Below are positions 47,042-56,961 of a stretch of 64,000 nucleotides of DNA, piece after piece. Numbering within the stretch: position 1 is the first letter of the stretch; each line of letters starts with the position of its first letter. The DNA is from Rebecca billardiae RCC1528 (Eukaryota > Protista > Haptophyta): assembly GCA_965240325.2 (NCBI GenBank), contig OZ251241.1, forward strand, positions 1,364,001 through 1,428,000. Reading direction: 5' to 3'. The notes below the pieces were generated by a model. That model did not search any database, was not told where the DNA came from, and worked only from the letters and a program-made list of their open reading frames with translations. Made by a program: the position numbers and the translations under genes.

Positions 47042-48463
47042 ATGCTGGGCCTGCGCCACGCGCTGTTGTGGGTGGCGGCGCTGCTGCTCGCGCCGCCGAC
47101 GGCGGGTTCGCACCAGCTCGCGAGGCGGGCGCTCGCGCCGCACCGCGCGCTCGCGCCGCACCGCGTCGCGCCGGCGCGCGCGCGCGTGTCGTCGGTCGCG
47201 GCCGTGACCAAGCCGGACCAGCTCGAGGACGAGTACGACGAGTACGCGCTGGAGGAGTCGGACGACCTCGACCTGCCGCCGTGCTGGGTCGGCCCCGCCG
47301 AGGACCTCAGCCTCCACGAGGGCGAGCACTGCGACGGCCTGCGCAAGTTCGAGCAGCCCGCGCGGTACATCGCGCGCGCGCGCGTGATGCTGTACATCGC
47401 CGGCTGGTACGCGCTGAGCGTCGGGTACCAGGTGACGAACAAGAAGGTGCTCAAGGTGCTCGCGCTGCCGTGGAGCCTCTCCGCCGCCGTCGTCGCCTTC
47501 GGCTGCCTCCCCGTCCTCTTCGCCTGGGCCACCGGCCTGCGCGACCGCCCGAGGGGCATGGGCGCGAAGGAGTGGCTGGGCCTGCTGCCGCTCGGCCTCT
47601 TCCACGGCACCGGGCTGCTGTCGGGCACGATCGGCAACGCGGCGGGCTCGGTGGCGTTCGCGCAGGTCGTCAAGGCCGGCGGCCCCGTCTGGACCGTCCT
47701 CCTCTCCGCCCTCCTCGTCGGCGAGCGCGCGTCGCACCGTGTGTGCCTCGCGCTCGTGCCGATCGTCGCGGGCGTCGGCGTCGCCACCATGTCCGAGCTC
47801 TCGTTCAAGTGGGTGGCGCTGCTGGGCGCGGCGATCTCGGACGTGTCGTACGTGCTGCGCAACGTGCTCACCAAGGCGTCGATGAAGAAGCGCGAGGCGC
47901 AGGGCGCCGAGGCCGCCACGCTCTCCAAGACGTCGCTCACGGGCGCGCTCACCGTGACCGCGACCGCGTGCCTGGTGCCCATGGCGCTGCTCGCAGAGTG
48001 GCGCACGGCGCCCGCGGCGTGGGCGGCGGCGACGGCGGCGATGCCGGCGGGCGTGCTCGCGGGCAAGATCGCGATGACCGGCGTCTACTTCTGGGGCTAC
48101 TCCGAGTTCGCCATGCTCGCGCTGAGCAACCTCACCCCCGTGACGCACGCCATCACCAACACGCTGCGGCGCGTCGTGCTGCTCGTGGTCGCGGCGTTCG
48201 TCTTTGCGACGCCGATGACGACGATGGGCAAGATCGGCTCGGGGATGGCGATCGGCGGCTCGTACCTGTACTCGCTGGCGAAGAACGCGGACAAGGCGCA
48301 GGCCGCGCGCGAGGCGGAGGAGGCCGCCGCCGCCGCCGCCGCCGCGCCGCCCGAGCCGACGATCGTCGCGCCACCCGCCATCGACGCGCTGCCGCTGCAG
48401 GCGGCTGCGGCCGACGGCTCGACCAACTCGACGCGCGCGCTCGCCAGCCCGGCGGAGAACTGA
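47042..48463 (+). CDS. Triose-phosphate/phosphate translocator (TPT) family transporter, likely plastid-targeted
   Basis: Signal peptide plus transit-like leader; WYALSVGYQVTNKKVL, VAFAQVVKAGGP, RNVLTK, PVTHAITNTLRRV. Confidence 0.9.
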   Translation: MLGLRHALLWVAALLLAPPTAGSHQLARRALAPHRALAPHRVAPARARVSSVAAVTKPDQLEDEYDEYALEESDDLDLPPCWVGPAEDLSLHEGEHCDGLRKFEQPARYIARARVMLYIAGWYALSVGYQVTNKKVLKVLALPWSLSAAVVAFGCLPVLFAWATGLRDRPRGMGAKEWLGLLPLGLFHGTGLLSGTIGNAAGSVAFAQVVKAGGPVWTVLLSALLVGERASHRVCLALVPIVAGVGVATMSELSFKWVALLGAAISDVSYVLRNVLTKASMKKREAQGAEAATLSKTSLTGALTVTATACLVPMALLAEWRTAPAAWAAATAAMPAGVLAGKIAMTGVYFWGYSEFAMLALSNLTPVTHAITNTLRRVVLLVVAAFVFATPMTTMGKIGSGMAIGGSYLYSLAKNADKAQAAREAEEAAAAAAAAPPEPTIVAPPAIDALPLQAAAADGSTNSTRALASPAEN

Positions 48464-48748
48464 GCGGCCGCTCGGTCGGCAGCGTCGGCGGGAGGGCGCG
48501 CCGGCGTGGCGAATGGGCCGCCCCCGCCCCGGCCCTTCGAGCCCGAGGCCCAGCCAGCGGCAGAGGCCGCAGACAGTCGAGCTGGCCCTCGTCCCGGGCG
48601 GTCCCGTCTCCCCGGACTCCCTGACCGCTGACCGCTGACGCCGCCGCCCAGATGTCCGATCGATCCGCAGCTCCGGCGGCGGCGCCGCCGCGAAGCTCAT
48701 CTAGTTATTCGTCGCGTTCTAGTATACCATCATGGTCCGTCCATCATC

Positions 48749-48846
48749 AGTATATAGTTAATATATATAATTAATTTTATTAATATACATATATATACAT
48801 ATATATTAATATATCGTTTATAATATATATATATATATATATCAAT
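48749..48846. repeat. (TA)n-rich island between convergent genes
   Basis: ~95 bp almost entirely A/T in an otherwise very GC-rich background. Confidence 0.9.
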
Positions 48847-49184
48847 AAGTTGCCGCCCGGGCGCCGCCCGCGCGCTGCCAGACATGCAGCATCGCGCGCG
48901 GCGGTGTGACTGCTAGTGCTAGTCTGCTCACTAGTCGTCTGACTACTGACTACGTACCGTAACGTCGTCTTATATATTGTTCATCGGGACTGGGCGGAGT
49001 TCGGCTGGACTGCCTCATCATCAGCATATATATATTCGTCATCATCATGCGCTGGATATCATATCATCGATCACCGCCGCCGCCCGCCGTCACCGCGGAG
49101 GCTCCGTGCCTGCGGCCCGGCGGTCTGGTGCCTCGTCCGGCGTCCCGGATCTCCTCGCATCGCGTCGGCCCGATGTTGGCATCG

Positions 49185-50774
49185 TCACGTCGCCGCCTTC
49201 GGGGCCCCGCTCCCCGGCCTGCGCGGCGACGGCGGCAGAGTCTGGCCCCCGGCTGACGCGGCGCCGACGTGCAGCGGCGCGTTGAGCGCGAGGGTGGCGT
49301 CGATCACTTGCTTGGAGCGGCCGCTCGACGCGAGCACGACCGCGAGGGTGCCGCAGATGAGCAGCGCGGCGCCCGCGGCGCCGAGCGGCGTGGGCGCCCC
49401 GTCCACCCCCGCCGCGATCCCCTCGAGCGTCGCGACGATCGGCTGCGTGAGTATCACCACCGAGATGGTGAGCGGGTGCAAGTACTTGAGCGCGACCACG
49501 TACCCCAGAGCGCCCACGCCGTCGCACACCGTCGCCACCCACAGCAGCACGGGGAGGCGGTCGGGCTCGGGGCGGAGCCAGCCGAAGACGCCGAAGCGCG
49601 AGGCGTCGAGCGGGGTGCGCGCCGCCGCGCCCTCCGCGCCCTCCGCGCCGCCGCCCAGCCCCGACGCCATCGCCTGCGTGAGCGGCGCGCAGAGCAGCAC
49701 CGCCAGACACGCGGCGTCCACCAGCCAGAACTGGACGAGGGGCGGCAGCAGCGGGCGGAGCCGCTTGCAGCAGAGCATGTACGCCACGCCGCCGAGCGAG
49801 CCGAGGAAGGCGATCAGGTCGCCGACCCACGGCGCGAAGGGCACCGCCGCCGCCGCGCCCGCCGCGCCCGCCGCGGACGGGCGCGGCGCGGAGAAGGCGA
49901 CGAGGACGGCGCCCGCGACCGCCACAAGCGCGCCGCCCACCTCCGCGGGCGCGGTCGGCCGGCCGCGCACCAGGCGGAGGGCGAGGAGGAGGATGGGCGT
50001 GCAGTTGTTGAAGAGGATGGCGTCGGCGGGGCCGGTGCCCTGCAGCGCGATGCAGAACGTGATCGACTGGAACAGCGTCGCGGCGCACGTGCCCAGCAGC
50101 AGCGCGAGCGTGCGCACGCGCGCGAGCGTGCCGCGCAGCCGCGCGCTCGCGCACAGCTGCCACGCTGCGACGGGGCCAAAGAGTGACACAAAAGCCGAGT
50201 AGCGCCAGATCAGCAGGAGCGCGCCGTCGACGCCGCGGCCGGTCGCGCGGAACGCGTCGCCCGTCGAAGAGCACGCGAGCAGCGCGACGAAGAGCACGAG
50301 CCAGCCCACCACGGGCACGTGCCGCGTCACAGTGACGGACAGCTGCACTGCCGCCGCGTGCGGCGGCGCGGACGCGTGCGGTTGCGCGGGCGGCGCGGCG
50401 GGTGCGGCCGGCTGCGCGCCCGCGGCGGCGAGGTGCGGGGGCGGCGCGCCGGGCTTGCGCGGCGCGGGCTCGGCGGGTGCGCCCTTCGACGCGGGGCCCA
50501 CGAGCCCGGCCTCCAGCGCCGACTCGCGCCCGGCGCCGAGCAGAGGCTCCGCCGCGGCCGCGACCGCAGCCGAGGGCGCGCGCCCGCCGCCGGGCCGCCT
50601 GCCGCCAGCCATCAGCGCCCACACACCACCGCCGCCGCCGGCGGCGCCGGCGGCACGGCGGGCGGCGGATGTCGGGGCGGGCGCGTCGGCGGCGACGCCC
50701 CGCGCCGCGATGCTCACGTGGTCGATCCCCGACGGCAGCGGCGGCAGGCACAACTCCCACAGTGGCGCCACCTC

Positions 50775-50823
<49 letters not shown>

Positions 50824-51225
50824 AATGGGCCGATGGATCGGCGCGCGCCGCGCGCGCGGCCCTCCGAGCCTGCGCTGCTGTAGCTCGTCGCTGTGGCGGG
50901 CTTCTCCTCGGAGGGGCGCTCCGCGCGGAAGGGCGCGCCGAGGCCTCCGGGCTCCACGCGCGCGCCCGCACCCGCCGCCGCCGCGCCGGGCGTGCGGCGC
51001 GGCTCGTGAGCGGAGCACGCGCGCGGCCGCGCGCCGAGAGGCGACTCCGCTGCGGCGGCCACGGCCGCGCCCTGCGGCGGCGGGGTGGGCGCCGCGGCGC
51101 GGTCCGGCGTGGCTCGGCGGCCGGCGAGTCGCGCAGGCGCCTCCTTGCTCAGCGCGGACGCGTTGAACAGCGTCACCACGCGCGTGGGGTGGTGATGGTG
51201 CGGTTGGCTCGGCGCGCTGCTCGCA

Positions 51226-51265
<40 letters not shown>

Positions 51266-52853
51266 GTGCCTCCTCCGCATCGTCGGTTACGCTCTCGTAA
51301 CCGTCGTCGAGCTCGAGGAGGTAGGCGACGGCGTGGGGTGAGGAGGCGGGCGGGGGCTGCGCGCTGAGCGCGACGAGCGCCGCGCGCTCCTCGCGCGCCG
51401 CCGCGCCGCCCTCGCCGCCGAGCAGCCGCGCCGAGTGCACGGGCGCGCCTGGCCCCGACGACGCCGCGGCCGCCGCGGCCGCGCCCGTGCCGGGTGGCAG
51501 GGCGCCAAGCGCCTCGAGAGCGTCGGTGAGGAGCGGCGTCGGGCGGGCGGGGGTGGCCTCGTCGTCGGAGGACGCGTCTTCCACCGCGAGCAGCGTGCCG
51601 GGCACCCACTCCACCGCCTCGCCGTCCACGCCGCCCGCGCACGCCGCAGCGCGCCCGCCGGCGCCGCCGCCGATCGCGCCGCCCTCGGCCGCGGACGGCG
51701 GCCGCGCGCCCGCCGAGCCGGCGGCGGCCGGGTCGTAGTCGAGCCTGAGGACGAGCGACGCGTCGGCCGGCGAGGTGGGCTCGTCGGCCTCGGCCCCGGA
51801 CGGCTCCTCGCCCGCCACCGCGCGGCTCCGCGCGAGCTGCGCCTCCGTCTCCACCGCGCACCACAGCTGTCCCGCCGCGCGCGTCGCCCATAGCTGGCCG
51901 CGCGCCGCCAGCGTTGCGTTCGCGTCCGCCAGCGACGAGTAGCCGCTGGTGCTGCGCGCCGCGGCGTCAGCGAGCGCGTCGAAGAGGCGCGTGTCGTACA
52001 GGAAGAGCCCAGCCTCGAGCGCCAGCCCGGGGCCCGCGAGCTGCCGCCCGATCTCGCGCACGAGCAGGTCGCCACGCACGGGCGTGCACAGGTCGCCGCC
52101 ACCGGTGCCGCCCTGCGGCGCGGCCGCGGCCGCCGCAGCCGCCGGCGCGGACGCGCCGTCGGCGGCGTCGACCGGCTCGCAGCGCGCGAAGACGGCCGTG
52201 GGCGGGAGCGCGTCCGCGCTCGACACGGGGAGCTCCGTCTCGATCAGCACGCGCCCCACCGCGTGCCCCGGCAGCCCGCTGTCCGCCAGACGGCGCACGA
52301 GCGCAGACTCGAACGCGTGGTCTGCGGCGCACAGCAGGAACGGCTCGCCCGGCTCGAAGCAGCCGGCGGCACGCGCGAGCGAGGCGGCGTGGCCCGCGAC
52401 GAACGAAGGGCCCAGGTCGAGCACCTCCACGCCCATCGCCTCCGCCTCCGGCGCCGCCAGCACCGCGTCGACCACGTCCTGCTCGGCCGGACCGCCGACG
52501 ACGAGCACGAGCCTCGAGATGCCTGCCGCCGCGAGCTGGCGCATGAGGAGCACGAGGAGCGGCTGCCCGCCCACGCGGAGGAGCTCCTTGTGCACCGGCG
52601 CGCCCGTCGTCGACGGGCGCGAGACGGTCGAGACGAGCGCCTGCCGCACGCGCGCGGCGCCGGGCGGCGGTGCCGGCGCGACCGGGAACGGCCCGCCCTC
52701 GCGCGCGCGGCTGCCTGCGGCCGAGGCGCCCGCGCCCACGCGGTGCGCGTACACCGCGTCGCCCTCGCGCGCGAGCGAGTCGACCAGGTCGTCCTCCGAG
52801 CACTCGAGCAGCGACGCGATGGCCGGCAGGTCGATGGACCACACGCGCGCCAT
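49185..52853 (-). CDS. Fusion of a GT-A nucleotidyltransferase-like domain and an EamA/DMT transporter
   Basis: N-terminal HKELLRVGGQPLL...GISRLVLVVG, FLLCAADHAF, EAGLF, WCAVET; long low-complexity linker; C-terminal ~10 TM helices with EamA-like PADAILFNNCTPI, GDLIAFLGS and LTQPIVATL. Confidence 0.8.
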
Positions 52854-53449: not shown

Positions 53450-53965
53450 CTACGGCGTCTCGCGGAGGTGGCAGCCGTTGTCGATCTTGCCGTACTCCGC
53501 GATGTCGACGTGCTGCATCTGCTGACCGAGGGCGCACGGGAAGCAGCACCACATGCAGAGGCACGACACGCAGCCGGACTCGCCCGTCTTGTACTTGTCG
53601 CTGATGCGGATGCGGAGCACGACCGCAAACACGAACACGGCGATCGCGACGATGAAGCCGATGACGTTGAGGATGGCACCGAAGCCCCCCAGCGCCGGCG
53701 AGATGAACTGGAGGAGGACGAAGAAGAGCCAGATGGCGAAGGTGGCGTACAGGACGTGCTTGTAGTTGAAGAGGCCGGAGCGGCCGGCGGAGCGCGCGAG
53801 GCCGACGCAATTGCAGCAGCACGAGAAGCAGAAGATCGCAGGGATCTCGCACCAGCAGCTGCAGAGGTCGACCAGCCAGCCTTCGCGTTTGCCCCCCTGC
53901 TGCACCTCGCCAGGCGGGACCGCCACGGCCTGGACGACCTGTGGCTGCTGCTGCTCAGCGGACAT
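53450..53965 (-). CDS. PLAC8/PCR-family Cys-rich membrane protein
   Basis: WLVDLCSC, CFSCCCNC, RIRISDKYK, CLCMWCCFPCALGQ. Confidence 0.9.
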   Translation of the reverse strand: MSAEQQQPQVVQAVAVPPGEVQQGGKREGWLVDLCSCWCEIPAIFCFSCCCNCVGLARSAGRSGLFNYKHVLYATFAIWLFFVLLQFISPALGGFGAILNVIGFIVAIAVFVFAVVLRIRISDKYKTGESGCVSCLCMWCCFPCALGQQMQHVDIAEYGKIDNGCHLRETP

Positions 53966-54128: not shown

Positions 54129-55520
54129 TCATCGGAACAAAGCGTGTGCGCCATCGGCATCGCCGCCTTCCTCATCCTGCCCGTCGAGCAGCTGCCGCGC
54201 GGCCACGACGGAGCGCTTGAGCAGGGAGGCGGCGATGCCTGTCCGGCTGGCGGCGTCCGCGAGTGCGGCGGCGTCGTCGATCACCAGCGTCGCGAGGGCC
54301 TTCACTGTCGTGACGCCCGCCGCCTCCAGCTGCTGCCGCCGCTTGGGGCCGACGCCAGGCACCGACGACACCGGCGCCTCCGCGCCGGTGCGCGCCTCGC
54401 GCTCGGCGCCGCCGGCGGGCGCCGCGGGCACGGCCGCCGCCGCGCCGGTCTCGGCGAGCCATCGCTCGATGCAGCGCGCGCGCACCCACGCCTCGAGCGA
54501 CGCGCGCTGCAGCACGAGCTCCAAGCTCTCCTCCTCGCCAGCGCTGCCAACGCTGCCGCCGCCGCCGCCGCGGCCGGCGAGGGACCCGCCGCCGCCGCCG
54601 CCGCCATCCTCGCCGTCTGCCGGTCCGGCTTGCCTCGTGGCACCGCGCGCTGCGGGCAAGCGCTCGCGCGTGCACGCGATCGGCGTGCCCCCGCCCCCCG
54701 GCTGCGTGAGCGCTCGCTCCACCGCGTCGCACGCCGCCTCGGCCGCGGCGGCCGCGCCGAAGCACACGCGCACCGCGCGCCGCGGCGTCTCGCTCTCGGT
54801 CGGGCCCGCCTCGAGCTGCGCGGCCACGAGCGCGTCGAGCGCGGCGTCGACCTCGGCGAGCGCGAGCTGCGGGGAGGCGCCCGCGAGCATCAGCCGCGAG
54901 TCCGCCTCGTCCCACAGCGCAGGGCGCACGCGCTCGAGCCACAGCGCGCCGAGGCCGCCTGCGTCGCCGTCGCCGTCGCCGCCGCCAGTGGCCAGCAGGC
55001 CAGCGCCGCGCGCGACGCAGATCGCGGAGAACGCCTCGCACGCGGCTTGCGCGCCGATCGGTACGCCCGCCTCGTACGTGTCGAGTACGAGCTGCTCGAG
55101 TGCGCCCGTGCTCTCCGCGCGCGCGAGCGCGCTGATCGCGAGCTCGTGGCAGCGCGCATCGACGCGGACGCCGCGCGCCGCCATGTCGTCGAGCAGCAAG
55201 CGCGCCCACTCCGCCTCGCCGCCGAGCGCGGCGCACCGCGCGATCGCGTCTCTGTAGCAGCGCTCGTCCGCCTCCATGCCGCTCGACCAGATCAGCTCGA
55301 TGATCTCGGCGACCTCCTCGCCAGAGGCGCAGCGCGGGATACGCAACGCCAGCCGCTCGCGCTCGCCGCCAAAGCCGTCGTCCTTGGCGGCGGCGCGGGG
55401 CGGCAGCGAGGGGCGGGCGCGGGCGATGGCCGAAGCCCACGCGAGCGGGCTCGCCGAGGGCCGCGCGGCGGGCACCGCGAGCGCGCCGCATGCGAGCAGC
55501 GCGTGCAACGCCGCGCGCAT
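54129..55520 (-). CDS. Organelle-targeted PPR-like protein with degenerate SMR-like region and C-terminal helix-hairpin-helix
   Basis: Signal peptide MRAALHALLACGALA; PPR-like GMEADERCYRDAIARCA..ARLLLDDMAARGVRVDARCHELAISALAR; C-terminal VSSVPGVGPKRRQQLEAAGVTTVKALA. Confidence 0.7.
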   Translation of the reverse strand: MRAALHALLACGALAVPAARPSASPLAWASAIARARPSLPPRAAAKDDGFGGERERLALRIPRCASGEEVAEIIELIWSSGMEADERCYRDAIARCAALGGEAEWARLLLDDMAARGVRVDARCHELAISALARAESTGALEQLVLDTYEAGVPIGAQAACEAFSAICVARGAGLLATGGGDGDGDAGGLGALWLERVRPALWDEADSRLMLAGASPQLALAEVDAALDALVAAQLEAGPTESETPRRAVRVCFGAAAAAEAACDAVERALTQPGGGGTPIACTRERLPAARGATRQAGPADGEDGGGGGGGSLAGRGGGGGSVGSAGEEESLELVLQRASLEAWVRARCIERWLAETGAAAAVPAAPAGGAEREARTGAEAPVSSVPGVGPKRRQQLEAAGVTTVKALATLVIDDAAALADAASRTGIAASLLKRSVVAARQLLDGQDEEGGDADGAHALFR

Positions 55521-55635
55521 GACGTGCCAGCGCCCGAGCGATGATGACATGCGCGCCGACCGAGACCACCCAGTCGGGCCAGTCCGGGCGGGCGAGCCGC
55601 GGGCGAGCTCGCACATTAACGGTTCGTTGTCAGCC

Positions 55636-56961
55636 ATGGCGACGGAGGCCCTGCGCGCGCGGCTGCACGACGTGGCGGCAACGCGGCTGCAGTCGGTGCA
55701 GCGCGGGCGCCAGGTGCGCGCCACGCTCGGGCGCGAGCCCGCATCCCCGCGCTCGTCACGCCTGTGCGCGAGCGTGTACAGCGCGCTCTGGTCGGCGCAG
55801 GCGCGCGTGCGGCTGGCGGGCACAACGTTCGTCTTCCGAGACGGCCAGCTCGCCGGCTGGTGGCTCGCGCCGGCGGATGGCTCAGAGAGGCGGCTCCTGC
55901 GCAAGAGGCCCGCCGCGCTCCACGCCGCATCGCTCGCCACGGTCGTCGCCGAGCTCGAGCCGCCTCGGCACGGCGGGCCGGCGCGGCGCGGGCAGCTCGC
56001 GGCGGTGTGGGTGCCTGCGGATGCGCCCACCGACCCTGTCGGCATCCCGGCGGGCACGGGCGCGGTGCGCGCGCTGCTCCAGGCGGTGCACGAGCGCTTG
56101 CTCGACGGCGTGCTCGTGCGCACGCCCAGCGCTGCGCCCGCGCCGCGCCTCGTGCGCGTGCGCTACACGCCACACGTGCAGCTGTGCAAGGCGTGCGAGC
56201 CGATCGCGCCGCCTCCCGCCTCTCTGCCGCGCGCTGGCGGGCTGGCGTCGGCGCCGCCGCCGCCGCCGCCGCCGCGCGGCGGGCGTCTCTCGCCCGAGCT
56301 CGAGCGCGCCGCCGCCGCGCTCGTCCTCGTCGACATCGTCGCGCCGCTCCACGCGCAGCTGCGCGCGGGCGTGCGCGTGTGGGCGCTCGATGTCTGGTTG
56401 GCGCTGGCGGACGGCGCCGAGGGCGGGGGCGGCCGGCTGCGGCTCGCGTGGGCGGCGGGGCTGCGGCTGAGCGAGGGCGCGCGCGCGAAGCCCGTCGTCG
56501 ACCGCTGGATCTCGCCGCCGCGCGCGCTGCCCGCAGCAGCCGCGGACGCGCCGCGCTCTTCCGCGCGCGCCGCTGCGCCACCGAGCGCCGCCGCCGACGC
56601 GAGGGCGGCACTGTCGGCTGCAGAGGCGCTGCGCTCGCGCGGCGCAGCGCCTGTGCGTGATGGCGTGCTCGGCGGCGCGGTGGCGGCCGACCCAGCCGCG
56701 CGCAGCTCGGCGGCGGGCGACCCGGCAGCGCAGGAGATGGCACGGAGGCACGGGACGCGGGTCGCGCAGCGTTTGGCGCCCTCGCGCGCTGTCGCTGAGG
56801 CGGAGGCGGCGCGGCTTCGGAAGGCGGCGGCGGCGGCAGTGGCGGCGCAGTCGGACTCTGAGCCTCGCGGTGCTGGGGAGCTTGCGGCCGGTGCCTCCGA
56901 GTCCAGCAGGCCCTGCTGCGTGGGCGCAGCATCGACACCAGAAGTGCCCCGTGATCGATGA
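55636..56961 (+). CDS. Hypothetical protein with N-terminal IQ-like motif
   Basis: ATG in GCCATGG context; AATRLQSVQRGRQVR fits the IQ consensus; coding-like codon bias. Confidence 0.6.
   Translation: MATEALRARLHDVAATRLQSVQRGRQVRATLGREPASPRSSRLCASVYSALWSAQARVRLAGTTFVFRDGQLAGWWLAPADGSERRLLRKRPAALHAASLATVVAELEPPRHGGPARRGQLAAVWVPADAPTDPVGIPAGTGAVRALLQAVHERLLDGVLVRTPSAAPAPRLVRVRYTPHVQLCKACEPIAPPPASLPRAGGLASAPPPPPPPRGGRLSPELERAAAALVLVDIVAPLHAQLRAGVRVWALDVWLALADGAEGGGGRLRLAWAAGLRLSEGARAKPVVDRWISPPRALPAAAADAPRSSARAAAPPSAAADARAALSAAEALRSRGAAPVRDGVLGGAVAADPAARSSAAGDPAAQEMARRHGTRVAQRLAPSRAVAEAEAARLRKAAAAAVAAQSDSEPRGAGELAAGASESSRPCCVGAASTPEVPRDR

What the first reader, a model, noticed from the sequence alone, without database searches (positions are those of the whole stretch)
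49185..52853. Degenerate nucleotidyltransferase fused to an EamA/DMT permease: candidate transceptor or LicB/LicC-like channelling unit
Seen: one uninterrupted 1222-aa ORF joins a GT-A NTP-transferase-like domain to a ~10-TM DMT domain through a ~400-aa disordered linker. The canonical LAAGxGxR nucleotide-binding loop reads LVSTVSRPST, while the downstream K-x-L, xAD and terminal W-x-x-V-E/D-T elements persist. Established: in bacterial lic operons an EamA-type choline permease (LicB) and a cytidylyltransferase (LicC) act in one pathway. Inference: a eukaryotic single-chain version for uptake and activation of choline, phosphonate or inositol-type solutes, or a pseudo-enzyme sensor gating the transporter.
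Basis: partly seen in the sequence, partly recalled or inferred. Interest (0 to 1): 0.7.

Follow-up and report, generated by a model that had tools for sequence, protein, structure and literature searches.

The report
Nucleotidyltransferase-like domain fused to DMT transporter
This GC-rich alga has a real single gene that joins a cytidylyltransferase-type domain with an unusual glycine-free phosphate loop to a 10-helix EamA/DMT membrane transporter; the gene belongs to a conserved, unstudied protist family also found in oomycetes, and its chemistry is still untested.

Summary
The minus-strand ORF 49185-52853 (1222 aa) is coding throughout: third-position GC is 0.88-1.00 in its frame. Both ends coincide with the termini of homologues.

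- **N-terminal domain (aa 66-345):** a GT-A nucleotidyltransferase fold. Pfam NTP_transf_3 scores 35 bits (cut-off 27). The family profile matches CTP:inositol-1-phosphate cytidylyltransferase at E 3e-16. Fold Z is 24.5 to IPCT and to PntC.
- **C-terminal domain (aa 838-1178):** a 10-helix EamA/DMT domain. A homologue's model matches YddG at Z 26 and LicB at Z 24.4.
- **Family:** an exhaustive search found 577 relatives. At least 52 of the 157 proteins fetched carry both domains in this order, including Plasmopara halstedii gene models.
- **Loop:** the "degenerate" loop is a family signature, (S/T)-x-A-(S/A)-R-P-(S/G). The catalytic-type Lys, the Asp-His pair and the E-T acid are kept in 32-34 of 35 members. 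A few paralogues have lost them together. The window protein departs at only 2 of 25 signature sites.

My reading is a working cytosolic nucleotide-binding, probably catalytic, module coupled to the transporter. A non-catalytic sensor remains a serious rival. No RNA run could be listed, and six literature searches found no paper on the fusion. First readers of this scan noted four more such fusions elsewhere in this genome; I did not check them.

The parts
49185..52853 (-). Whole gene: uninterrupted 1222-aa ORF, ATG at 52853, TGA at 49185-49187
   Evidence: ORF. (GC3 0.88-1.00 in frame throughout, flanks drop to GC 0.3-0.65). (both termini align with homologues).
52749..52847 (-). Family-specific N-terminal motif (aa 3-35), consensus D-L-x-x-L-A-x-L-x-G-C-S-x-x-E-L; two short helices in the model
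   Evidence: Alignment A2; model helices 9-15 and 20-29. Function unknown.
51819..52658 (-). GT-A nucleotidyltransferase-fold domain (aa 66-345), IPCT/PntC/LicC type
   Evidence: Pfam NTP_transf_3 35.2 bits against a cut-off of 27. Family profile against PDB: 2xme E 3.3e-16 over the whole domain. Foldseek top hit 4jd0. VIA Z 24.5 to 4jd0 and to 6pd1.
52581..52637 (-). Remodelled PPi loop (aa 73-91). S78-R79-P80-S81-T82 stands in place of G-x-G-(T/S)-R, then five residues, then H88-K89 in place of P-K
   Evidence: Family counts: R79 in 30/35, P80 in 26/35, K89 in 32/35. The position of the canonical Arg (aa 82) is not conserved.
52068..52172 (-). Variable Ala/Gly-rich insertion within the domain (aa 228-262)
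   Evidence: pLDDT below 50 at 237-258. Several homologues have insertions at the same site. GC3 stays at 0.94.
52317..52322 (-). D178-H179, aligned with the G-D(H) Mg-binding Asp of IPCT
   Evidence: D in 33/35, H in 32/35.
51837..51863 (-). W331 ... E335-T336 ... Q339, aligned with W-x-D-V-D-T of IPCT
   Evidence: W 35/35, E 34/35, T 32/35, Q 33/35.
50364..51818 (-). Linker (aa 346-830): Ala/Gly/Pro-rich, fast-evolving, with a few conserved short motifs
   Evidence: Composition. No Pfam family. Only the juxtamembrane motif aligns with P0003. Conserved columns listed.
51227..51265 (-). Perfect trinucleotide repeat (13 copies) encoding a poly-Gly run
50777..50822 (-). Perfect trinucleotide repeat (15.3 copies) encoding a poly-Gly run
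50706..50765 (-). Conserved juxtamembrane motif (aa 697-716), P-L-W ... L-P-S-G-I-x-x-V-S-I. The matching stretch is a beta strand in the homologue's model
   Evidence: Strands 422-430 and 435-442 of the P0010 model.
49320..50342 (-). 10-helix EamA/DMT transporter domain (aa 838-1178)
   Evidence: Hydropathy. Alignment A3 with invariant W-R and several Gly and Pro. EamA in 27/29 relatives. Homologue model against YddG: Z 26.0, 283 of 287 residues aligned.
49284..49313 (-). Conserved C-terminal tail motif (aa 1181-1190), x-x-V-I-D-A-T-x-A; a beta strand in the homologue's model
   Evidence: alignment; strand 748-752 of P0010.

Best explanation
One apparently intron-free gene encodes a polytopic membrane protein. 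Its N-terminus, the nucleotidyltransferase-fold domain and the linker lie on the cytosolic side, ahead of a 10-helix EamA/DMT transporter. This orientation is inferred. The soluble domain is of the IPCT/PntC/LicC type, enzymes that join CMP from CTP to a small phosphorylated or phosphonate head group. It keeps the Lys that handles the alpha-phosphate and the two acidic metal-binding positions. Its pyrophosphate loop is rebuilt without glycines, around a conserved Arg-Pro. I read it as a working nucleotide-binding, probably catalytic, module tethered to the cytosolic mouth of the transporter, so that making or binding a nucleotide-activated head group is coupled to moving that compound or its precursor across the membrane. 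My preferred direction is synthesis in the cytosol followed by export into a secretory compartment or out of the cell, as nucleotide-sugar transporters do. Shown: gene integrity, both folds, conservation of the architecture, and the pattern of site conservation. Inferred: topology, catalysis, substrate class, direction and coupling. My confidence in the anatomy is about 0.9, in a functional nucleotide-binding site about 0.65, and in catalysis plus coupled transport about 0.45.
For: Coding and boundaries. Conserved architecture: 36 of the 150 best cluster representatives carry both domains by single-sequence search, and 52 of 157 do by family profiles; these include Plasmopara halstedii XP_024580147.1 and IMG entries named as DMT permease plus NDP-sugar pyrophosphorylase. 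N domain. Site conservation: K89 in 32/35, D178 in 33/35, H179 in 32/35, E205 in 32/35, G282 and W331 in 35/35, E335 in 34/35, R79 in 30/35. The window protein departs at only 2 of 25 signature sites. P0003, P0004 and P0124 have lost 12-14 of them together, which marks these sites as one functional unit. P0003 and P0004 sit inside the window's own clade. The N domain is as conserved as the transporter: 26-42% against 23-45% identity to the window. Published mutagenesis shows that the Lys is essential and that the loop defines the PPi site (PMC6697681). R16, K26 and D112 are reported as critical in IMPCT (PMC12275187). Topology: loops 2, 4, 6 and 8 hold 11 Lys/Arg, against 3 in the short odd-numbered loops (my count on the sequence). 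In the homologue's model the C-terminal strand lies with the linker strands.
Against: Both glycines of G-x-G are replaced, the second by Pro, in essentially the whole family. The position of the canonical Arg is not conserved. Substituting that Arg cut PntC activity below 10% (PMC6697681), so NTP binding and PPi release may not work in the usual way. Non-catalytic relatives with the same fold exist and appear among the matches: eIF2B epsilon and gamma, and the GMPPA/GMPPB entries. Some paralogues keep the transporter with a wrecked site, so the site is not always needed. There is no expression, activity, transport or localisation data. pTM was 0.62 for the full-length homologue, and I could not inspect the domain interface.
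Confidence: 0.5

Rival explanations
1. Pseudo-enzyme sensor. The nucleotidyltransferase-fold domain no longer catalyses anything. It binds a nucleotide or nucleotide-activated metabolite and gates or tunes the fused DMT transporter, much as GMPPA senses GDP-mannose or as the eIF2B epsilon and gamma subunits use the same fold without catalysis.
For: Family-wide loss of both loop glycines and of the canonical Arg position. eIF2B subunits and the GMPPA/GMPPB complex are among the profile and fold matches. Some paralogues carry a further degraded site on an intact transporter. A long flexible tether suits a regulatory module.
Against: The catalytic-type Lys, the Asp-His pair and the E-T acid are kept in 32-34 of 35 members, and a new Arg-Pro is fixed in the loop. 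A binding-only module usually tolerates more drift at such positions, although these residues would also serve to bind NDP-X with Mg.
Confidence: 0.3
2. Uptake-and-activate unit, the first reader's LicB/LicC reading. The DMT half imports a head-group precursor and the fused domain cytidylylates it at once. Without a kinase this works only for a substrate that arrives already as a phosphate or phosphonate, such as 2-aminoethylphosphonate or phosphocholine.
For: PntC (Z 24.5) and LicC (Z 21.1) are strong fold matches for the window's own domain. LicB matches the homologue's transporter half at Z 24.4. PntC acts directly on a phosphonate, with no kinase (PMC6697681). IMG names one member 'choline kinase/DMT-like permease', which is an automatic label only.
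Against: No kinase domain is present in the protein. LicB is statistically tied with YddG, PfCRT and TPT, and no sequence-level match to LicB exists. The LicC profile match is short and weak (E 5e-4). Nothing here shows the direction of transport.
Confidence: 0.15
3. Annotation artefact. Two neighbouring genes, or a gene plus non-coding DNA, are read through because stop codons are rare in DNA of 80% GC.
For: Long ORFs occur in several frames here. Codon periodicity is weakest at aa 570-760. No RNA run could be listed. An in-frame Met lies at aa 748.
Against: The same two domains in the same order occur in at least 52 other proteins, including gene models from oomycete genomes. Homology continues upstream of Met748, from aa 692. 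GC3 stays highest in this frame throughout. Intergenic DNA here has GC 0.3-0.65, unlike the linker at 0.8-0.88.
Confidence: 0.03

Closest known systems
IPCT-DIPPS bifunctional protein of Archaeoglobus fulgidus (PDB 4mnd) and stand-alone IPCT (2xme, 4jd0)
   Same: It is the best sequence-profile match (E 3e-16 over the whole domain) and the best fold match for the N domain. Both share the D-H and I-G-(K/R) motifs. In nature IPCT is likewise fused N-terminally to a membrane domain.
   Different: The membrane partner there is a CDP-alcohol phosphotransferase enzyme (PF01066), not a DMT transporter. IPCT has the canonical G-x-G-T-R loop. It is archaeal or bacterial, not eukaryotic.
LicB (choline permease, 7b0k) plus LicC (CTP:phosphocholine cytidylyltransferase, 1jyk) of the bacterial lic operon
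   Same: One pathway pairs an EamA-type DMT with a GT-A cytidylyltransferase. Both folds are matched: Z 24.4 on the homologue's model and Z 21.1 on the window's own domain.
   Different: They are separate proteins and need the kinase LicA between them. There is no sequence-level match to LicB. LicC ranks below IPCT and PntC. The loop is canonical in LicC.
PntC phosphonate cytidylyltransferase, including the PntC-AEPT fusion (6pd1)
   Same: Fold match Z 24.5, tied for best. It acts on a small zwitterionic head group without a kinase, and it occurs fused to partner domains (PMC6697681).
   Different: Its partners are soluble aminotransferases. It has the canonical G-x-G-(T/S)-R loop with an essential Arg15. 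It is bacterial.
YddG and other EamA-family DMT transporters; nucleotide-sugar transporters (Vrg4, CMP-sialic acid transporter) as more distant DMTs
   Same: A 10-helix DMT fold: Z 26.0 to YddG, 22.1 to Vrg4 and 21.3 to the CMP-sialic acid transporter (6oh4) on the homologue's model. Pfam EamA matches 27 of 29 relatives.
   Different: None of them carries a nucleotidyltransferase domain or the juxtamembrane beta motifs. The window's own EamA score is below the Pfam cut-off.
Non-catalytic nucleotidyltransferase-fold subunits (eIF2B epsilon/gamma, GMPPA)
   Same: They share the fold and appear among the matches. From my own knowledge, not tested here, eIF2B epsilon also lacks the glycine loop.
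   Different: This family keeps the Lys and the acidic metal positions under strong conservation. These matches score lower than IPCT. Those proteins are soluble complexes.

Membership tests
GT-A small-molecule nucleotidyltransferases (Pfam NTP_transf_3; IPCT/PntC/LicC type) | Profile match above the curated threshold | tested here: met
   35.2 bits against a cut-off of 27 for aa 88-194. 34 of 35 family members match. Family profile against 2xme: E 3.3e-16.
GT-A small-molecule nucleotidyltransferases (Pfam NTP_transf_3; IPCT/PntC/LicC type) | GT-A Rossmann-like fold superposable on solved members | tested here: met
   Model pLDDT 80, pTM 0.77. 4jd0: Z 24.5, rmsd 2.6, 231 residues aligned. 6pd1: Z 24.5. 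Foldseek E 3e-12.
GT-A small-molecule nucleotidyltransferases (Pfam NTP_transf_3; IPCT/PntC/LicC type) | Signature G-x-G-(T/S)-R-x(4-8)-P-K (PMC6697681) | tested here: not met
   The window reads S-R-P-S-T, then five residues, then H-K. Both Gly and the Arg are absent; the T/S position, the spacing and the Lys are present. The whole family shares the change.
GT-A small-molecule nucleotidyltransferases (Pfam NTP_transf_3; IPCT/PntC/LicC type) | Catalytic Lys and metal-binding acidic residues | tested here: met
   K89, D178 and E335 align with the P-K Lys, the G-D Asp and the D-V-D-T Asp of IPCT. They are kept in 32-34 of 35 members. This rests on alignment only.
GT-A small-molecule nucleotidyltransferases (Pfam NTP_transf_3; IPCT/PntC/LicC type) | Nucleotidyl transfer activity | not testable with these tools
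   Needs a biochemical assay.
Drug/metabolite transporter superfamily, EamA family | Pfam EamA match (two repeats) | tested here: inconclusive
   The window's own score is 17-18 bits, below the 28.2 cut-off, with two stretches. 27 of 29 aligned relatives match, best E 3.7e-16.
Drug/metabolite transporter superfamily, EamA family | Ten transmembrane helices (5+5) with the DMT fold | tested here: met
   About ten hydrophobic segments at aa 845-1178. The model of homologue P0010 (29% identical in this domain) has ten helices and matches YddG 5i20 at Z 26.0 with 283 of 287 residues aligned. The window's own transporter half was not folded.
LicB/LicC choline uptake-and-activation system | Specific relationship to LicB and LicC rather than to DMTs and nucleotidyltransferases in general | tested here: inconclusive
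   LicB at Z 24.4 is tied with YddG at 26.0 and PfCRT at 24.5. No sequence match exists at E up to 1. LicC at Z 21.1 ranks below IPCT and PntC at 24.5.
LicB/LicC choline uptake-and-activation system | Kinase step (LicA) between import and cytidylylation | tested here: not met
   Neither Pfam nor NCBIfam finds a kinase domain anywhere in the 1222 aa. A separate gene elsewhere was not searched for.
IPCT-DIPPS bifunctional enzymes | CDP-alcohol phosphotransferase membrane domain (PF01066) | tested here: not met
   No PF01066 hit. The membrane half is EamA/DMT.
Catalytically dead nucleotidyltransferase-fold pseudo-enzymes | Loss of catalytic residues beyond the loop | tested here: not met
   Lys, Asp-His and the acidic E-T are retained in the window protein and in most of the family. 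Only P0003, P0004 and P0124 show a joint loss.

The most novel reading that the evidence does not exclude
A protist-wide class of 'self-feeding' transporters. A cytidylyltransferase with a glycine-free, Arg-Pro pyrophosphate loop makes a CMP/CDP-activated head group (for example an aminoethylphosphonate, inositol-phosphate or choline-phosphate derivative) at the cytosolic mouth of its own fused DMT carrier. The carrier delivers that head group into the secretory lumen to decorate lipids or glycans. Site-dead paralogues serve as regulatory partners.
Probability: 0.2. Interest if true: 0.75.

Novelty: new variant of a known kind. Interest (0 to 1): 0.52.

Why it matters
Both domains are textbook folds. 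A nucleotidyltransferase covalently tethered to a DMT carrier has not been described in any paper I could find, yet it is conserved in oomycetes and in a GC-rich alga that earlier scan notes call haptophyte-like, and it appears to be multi-copy in this genome. If the soluble domain is active, it shows that this enzyme class can work without the glycine loop held to define its PPi site. It would also point to a direct route for supplying activated head groups across a membrane. If the domain is inactive, this is a clear case of a metabolite-sensing pseudo-enzyme built into a transporter. Either outcome can be tested directly with the isolated 350-residue domain. The oomycete members give a genetically tractable entry point.

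Tried and rejected
- **Word-index searches:** the full protein and the N domain found nothing, probably because low-complexity words filled the candidate lists. The C domain found only one 5'-truncated fragment, P0001. The exhaustive search was therefore needed.
- **Exact-sequence look-up:** the ORF is not in the collection.
- **Metagenome locus scan:** 142 pattern hits, none confirmed.
- **Genome-contig scan with alignment A2:** Whether bacteria or archaea have the fusion was therefore not tested.
- **RNA runs:** none could be listed, so read laying was not used and the one-transcript question stays open.
- **ESM Atlas:** the search by features gave no usable hit. The search by shape found no cluster of 50 or more members with the same fusion, only single-domain clusters and IPCT-DIPPS.
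- **C-domain profile against PDB sequences:** no real match.
- **PscRXLR1/Psc_781.4 paper on an oomycete EamA transporter (PMC3320632):** this concerns a 332-aa DMT without a nucleotidyltransferase domain, so it is not this family.
- **P. infestans transporter survey (PMC5176271):** it does not mention the fusion.
- **The IPCT structure paper:** not held by DOI.
- **Residue numbering:** I could not reconcile the published D112 numbering of IMPCT with the chain index in the HMMER alignment. I therefore rely on the aligned G-D motif, not on the number.
- **Hidden in-frame intron in the aa 228-262 insertion:** rejected, because GC3 stays at 0.94 and homologues have insertions at the same loop.
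Full report
**1. The observation**

The minus strand carries an ATG-to-TGA ORF of 1222 aa at 49185..52853. The region has GC 0.70-0.84, and several other frames also hold long ORFs. One is a 933-aa Arg-rich ORF at 49090..51891. ORF length is therefore no evidence of a gene.

Three things show that this frame is coding.
- Third-position GC is 0.88-1.00 in this frame over the entire ORF and is never exceeded by the other two frames. Composition collapses to GC 0.3-0.65 immediately outside both ends.
- The first residues and the C-terminal tail align with the termini of homologues, so the ATG at 52853 and the stop are the conserved boundaries.
- Both halves are recognisable domains (sections 2 and 3).

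Periodicity is weakest at aa 570-760. There the protein is Ala/Gly/Pro-rich, which raises GC at codon positions 1 and 2.

**2. The N-terminal half**

Pfam NTP_transf_3 matches aa 88-194 at 35.2 bits (cut-off 27). NTP_transferase scores just below its cut-off. The best NCBIfam hit, which is weak, is the bifunctional inositol-1-phosphate cytidylyltransferase/DIPP synthase.

A profile of 35 family N domains (alignment A2) matches CTP:inositol-1-phosphate cytidylyltransferase over the whole domain: 2xme at E 3.3e-16 and 4mnd at E 2.8e-15. Next come 4jd0 and GMPPB. Further down are GlmU, UGPases, eIF2B epsilon/gamma, IspD and LicC. In total, 34 of 35 members match NTP_transf_3.

The AlphaFold model of the window's own aa 1-350 has pLDDT 80 and pTM 0.77.
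- Foldseek ranks T. maritima IPCT (4jd0) first.
- VIA-align gives Z 24.5 to 4jd0 (rmsd 2.6, 231 residues aligned) and Z 24.5 to the phosphonate cytidylyltransferase PntC (6pd1).
- It gives Z 23.3 and 23.0 to A. fulgidus IPCT and Z 21.1 to LicC.

The nearest relatives are the small-headgroup cytidylyltransferases.

**3. The C-terminal half**

About ten hydrophobic helices lie between aa 845 and 1178. The window's own EamA score is below the Pfam cut-off (17-18 bits against 28.2). Even so, 27 of 29 aligned relatives match EamA, with a best E of 3.7e-16.

I folded a compact homologue, P0010 (756 aa, 29% identical to the window in this domain), with a full-length family alignment. The model has pLDDT 80.7 and pTM 0.62 and shows ten helices. 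That part matches:
- YddG 5i20 at Z 26.0 (283 of 287 residues aligned);
- PfCRT at 24.5;
- LicB at 24.4;
- the triose-phosphate translocator at 23.4;
- the GDP-mannose transporter Vrg4 at 22.1.

The DMT fold is therefore established for the family. No sequence-level match to any solved DMT exists, so no particular substrate class can be read from it.

**4. The fusion is conserved**

Word-index searches failed, but the exhaustive phmmer search found 577 proteins at E up to 1e-3 and 269 at E up to 1e-10.
- Of the best 150 cluster representatives, 36 carry both domains in the same order by single-sequence search.
- With family profiles the count is 52 of 157.

Named members are Plasmopara halstedii XP_024580147.1, called 'drug metabolite transporter superfamily' or 'putative mobA-like NTP transferase', and IMG entries named 'DMT-like permease/NDP-sugar pyrophosphorylase', 'dTDP-glucose pyrophosphorylase/DMT-like permease' and 'choline kinase/DMT-like permease'. 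These names are automatic.

A 5'-truncated 1671-nt contig (P0001/L001) is homologous from window aa 692 onwards. That is upstream of the only plausible internal start, Met748. A maximum-likelihood tree places the window protein in a 100/99-supported clade with P0002, P0007, P0003 and P0004. Other well-supported clades include the one holding the Plasmopara sequence.

Another 35 DMT relatives have N-terminal extensions of 250 aa or more that fail the N-domain profile; the 10 of these that I scanned have no Pfam domain in the extension. The ESM Atlas holds no large cluster with this architecture. First readers of this scan noted four more such fusions elsewhere in this genome. I did not check them.

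**5. The 'degenerate' loop**

The published consensus is G-x-G-(T/S)-R-x(4-8)-P-K. Its first five residues define the PPi site through backbone amides and the Arg. The Lys handles the alpha-phosphate. Substituting Arg15 or Lys25 with alanine cut PntC activity below 10% (PMC6697681). R16, K26 and D112 are reported as critical in IMPCT (PMC12275187).

The window reads S78-R79-P80-S81-T82, then five residues, then H88-K89. The spacing fixes the register. In that register:
- both glycines are gone, replaced by Ser and Pro;
- the Arg position is Thr;
- the Lys is kept.

This is not decay of one gene. It is the family consensus, (S/T)-x-A-(S/A)-R-P-(S/G), with R79 in 30/35 members, P80 in 26/35 and K89 in 32/35. 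The canonical Arg position varies freely.

Downstream positions are strongly conserved:
- D178 in 33/35 and H179 in 32/35;
- E205 in 32/35;
- A281 in 33/35 and G282 in 35/35;
- W331 in 35/35;
- E335 in 34/35, T336 in 32/35 and Q339 in 33/35.

D178 aligns with the G-D(H) Asp of IPCT, and E335-T336 aligns with its D-T.

The window protein departs from the family at 2 of 25 signature sites (V77, H88). P0003, P0004 and P0124 have lost 12-14 of them together: the R-P loop, K to R, D-H to E-R, H-A to Y-T, and E-A to L-T. P0003 and P0004 sit inside the window's own clade. Joint loss in a few paralogues against joint retention elsewhere marks these residues as one functional site. That site is intact in the window protein. 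'Degenerate' is therefore an overstatement; 'remodelled PPi loop on an otherwise intact site' fits better.

**6. Linker and topology**

The linker spans aa 346-830. It is 25% Ala, 17.5% Gly and 12% Pro. It holds two perfect trinucleotide repeats that encode poly-Gly. It aligns with the closest full-length relatives only at the motif W ... L-P-S-G-I-D-x-V-x-I (aa 699-715).

Across the family a few short motifs recur: an invariant Pro, usually followed by Trp-x-Val, just after the N domain; P-L-L; L-A-x-P; and L-P-S-(D/G)-I-x-x-V. In the P0010 model these stretches, together with the conserved C-terminal x-I-D-A-T-x-A tail, are beta strands (309-316, 377-383, 393-399, 422-430, 435-442 and 748-752). 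This suggests a small juxtamembrane module built from both termini. I could not inspect coordinates or PAE, so that remains a suggestion.

There is no hydrophobic N-terminal signal. Lys/Arg counts favour the even-numbered loops: 11 against 3 in the short odd-numbered loops (my count on the sequence). The soluble domain, the linker and the C-tail should therefore be cytosolic. This is inferred.

**7. Mechanism**

My best reading is a functional cytosolic nucleotide-binding, probably catalytic, module of the cytidylyltransferase type tethered to a DMT carrier. It would couple the formation or binding of a nucleotide-activated small head group to membrane transport. My preferred direction is cytosolic synthesis followed by export, following the logic of nucleotide-sugar transporters, which belong to the same superfamily.

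The main rival is a non-catalytic sensor that gates the carrier. The loss of the glycines and of the canonical Arg supports it, as does the existence of site-dead paralogues. The retention of the Lys and the acidic positions weakens it only partly, since those residues would also bind NDP-X with Mg.

Without a kinase domain, it works only for substrates that arrive as phosphates or phosphonates. Nothing ties the transporter specifically to LicB.

The artefact reading, two genes read through, is very unlikely given the conserved architecture.

**8. Novelty**

Six full-text searches found no paper on the fusion. The two candidate papers I opened concern other proteins. Public databases already hold members under automatic names that mention both domains, so the architecture is not unseen, only unstudied.

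I class it as a new variant of a known kind: known folds, an unstudied enzyme-carrier fusion, and a family-specific glycine-free PPi loop.

**9. Limits**

- No RNA evidence was available.
- Prokaryotes were not searched.
- The organism was not identified. Earlier notes of this scan call it haptophyte-like, and I did not test that.
- Substrate, direction, catalysis and localisation are untested.

Noticed in passing
window 47042-48463 (+): The convergent neighbour is a triose-phosphate/phosphate translocator-family DMT (Pfam TPT 229 bits, 473 aa). A second DMT carrier therefore sits about 720 bp from the 3' end of the fusion gene.
   Followed up: partly
window 53450-53965 (-): The upstream neighbour encodes a 171-aa Cys-rich PLAC8-family protein (41.8 bits, cut-off 34.4).
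   Followed up: partly
window 54129-56123 (-): A 664-aa ORF has only a weak helix-hairpin-helix (HHH_5) hit near its C-terminus, 23 bits and below the cut-off. It is otherwise unassigned.
   Followed up: no
window 48500-49180: The spacer between the two convergent genes drops to GC 0.32-0.55, against 0.75-0.85 in coding DNA. This sharp contrast is a useful marker of gene boundaries in this genome.
   Followed up: no
window 49090-51891 (-), another frame: A 933-aa Arg-rich ORF overlaps the real gene out of frame. It is an example of the spurious long ORFs that this GC content produces.
   Followed up: yes
P0003, P0004, P0007, P0124 (relatives; L003 for P0003): Some family members keep an intact DMT half but have lost the conserved pocket residues of the soluble domain. 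P0003, P0004 and P0124 depart at 12-14 of 25 sites. P0007 lacks the W ... E-T motif. They may be regulatory or partner paralogues.
   Followed up: partly
P0023, P0024, P0029, P0036, P0048, P0049, P0063, P0066, P0069, P0093 and 25 more: These DMT relatives of the same subfamily have N-terminal extensions of 250-590 aa that fail the N-domain profile. The 10 that I scanned also match no Pfam family there.
   Followed up: partly
L002 1-5149: The contig of the closest relative, P0002 (43% identity), packs four called genes into 5.1 kb, with gaps of about 85 and 145 bp, at GC 0.63-0.71. That genome is unusually compact and its source is unidentified.
   Followed up: no
window 50777-50822 and 51227-51265: Two perfect trinucleotide microsatellites (15.3 and 13 copies) inside the coding linker encode poly-Gly runs. 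They are likely to vary in length between strains.
   Followed up: no
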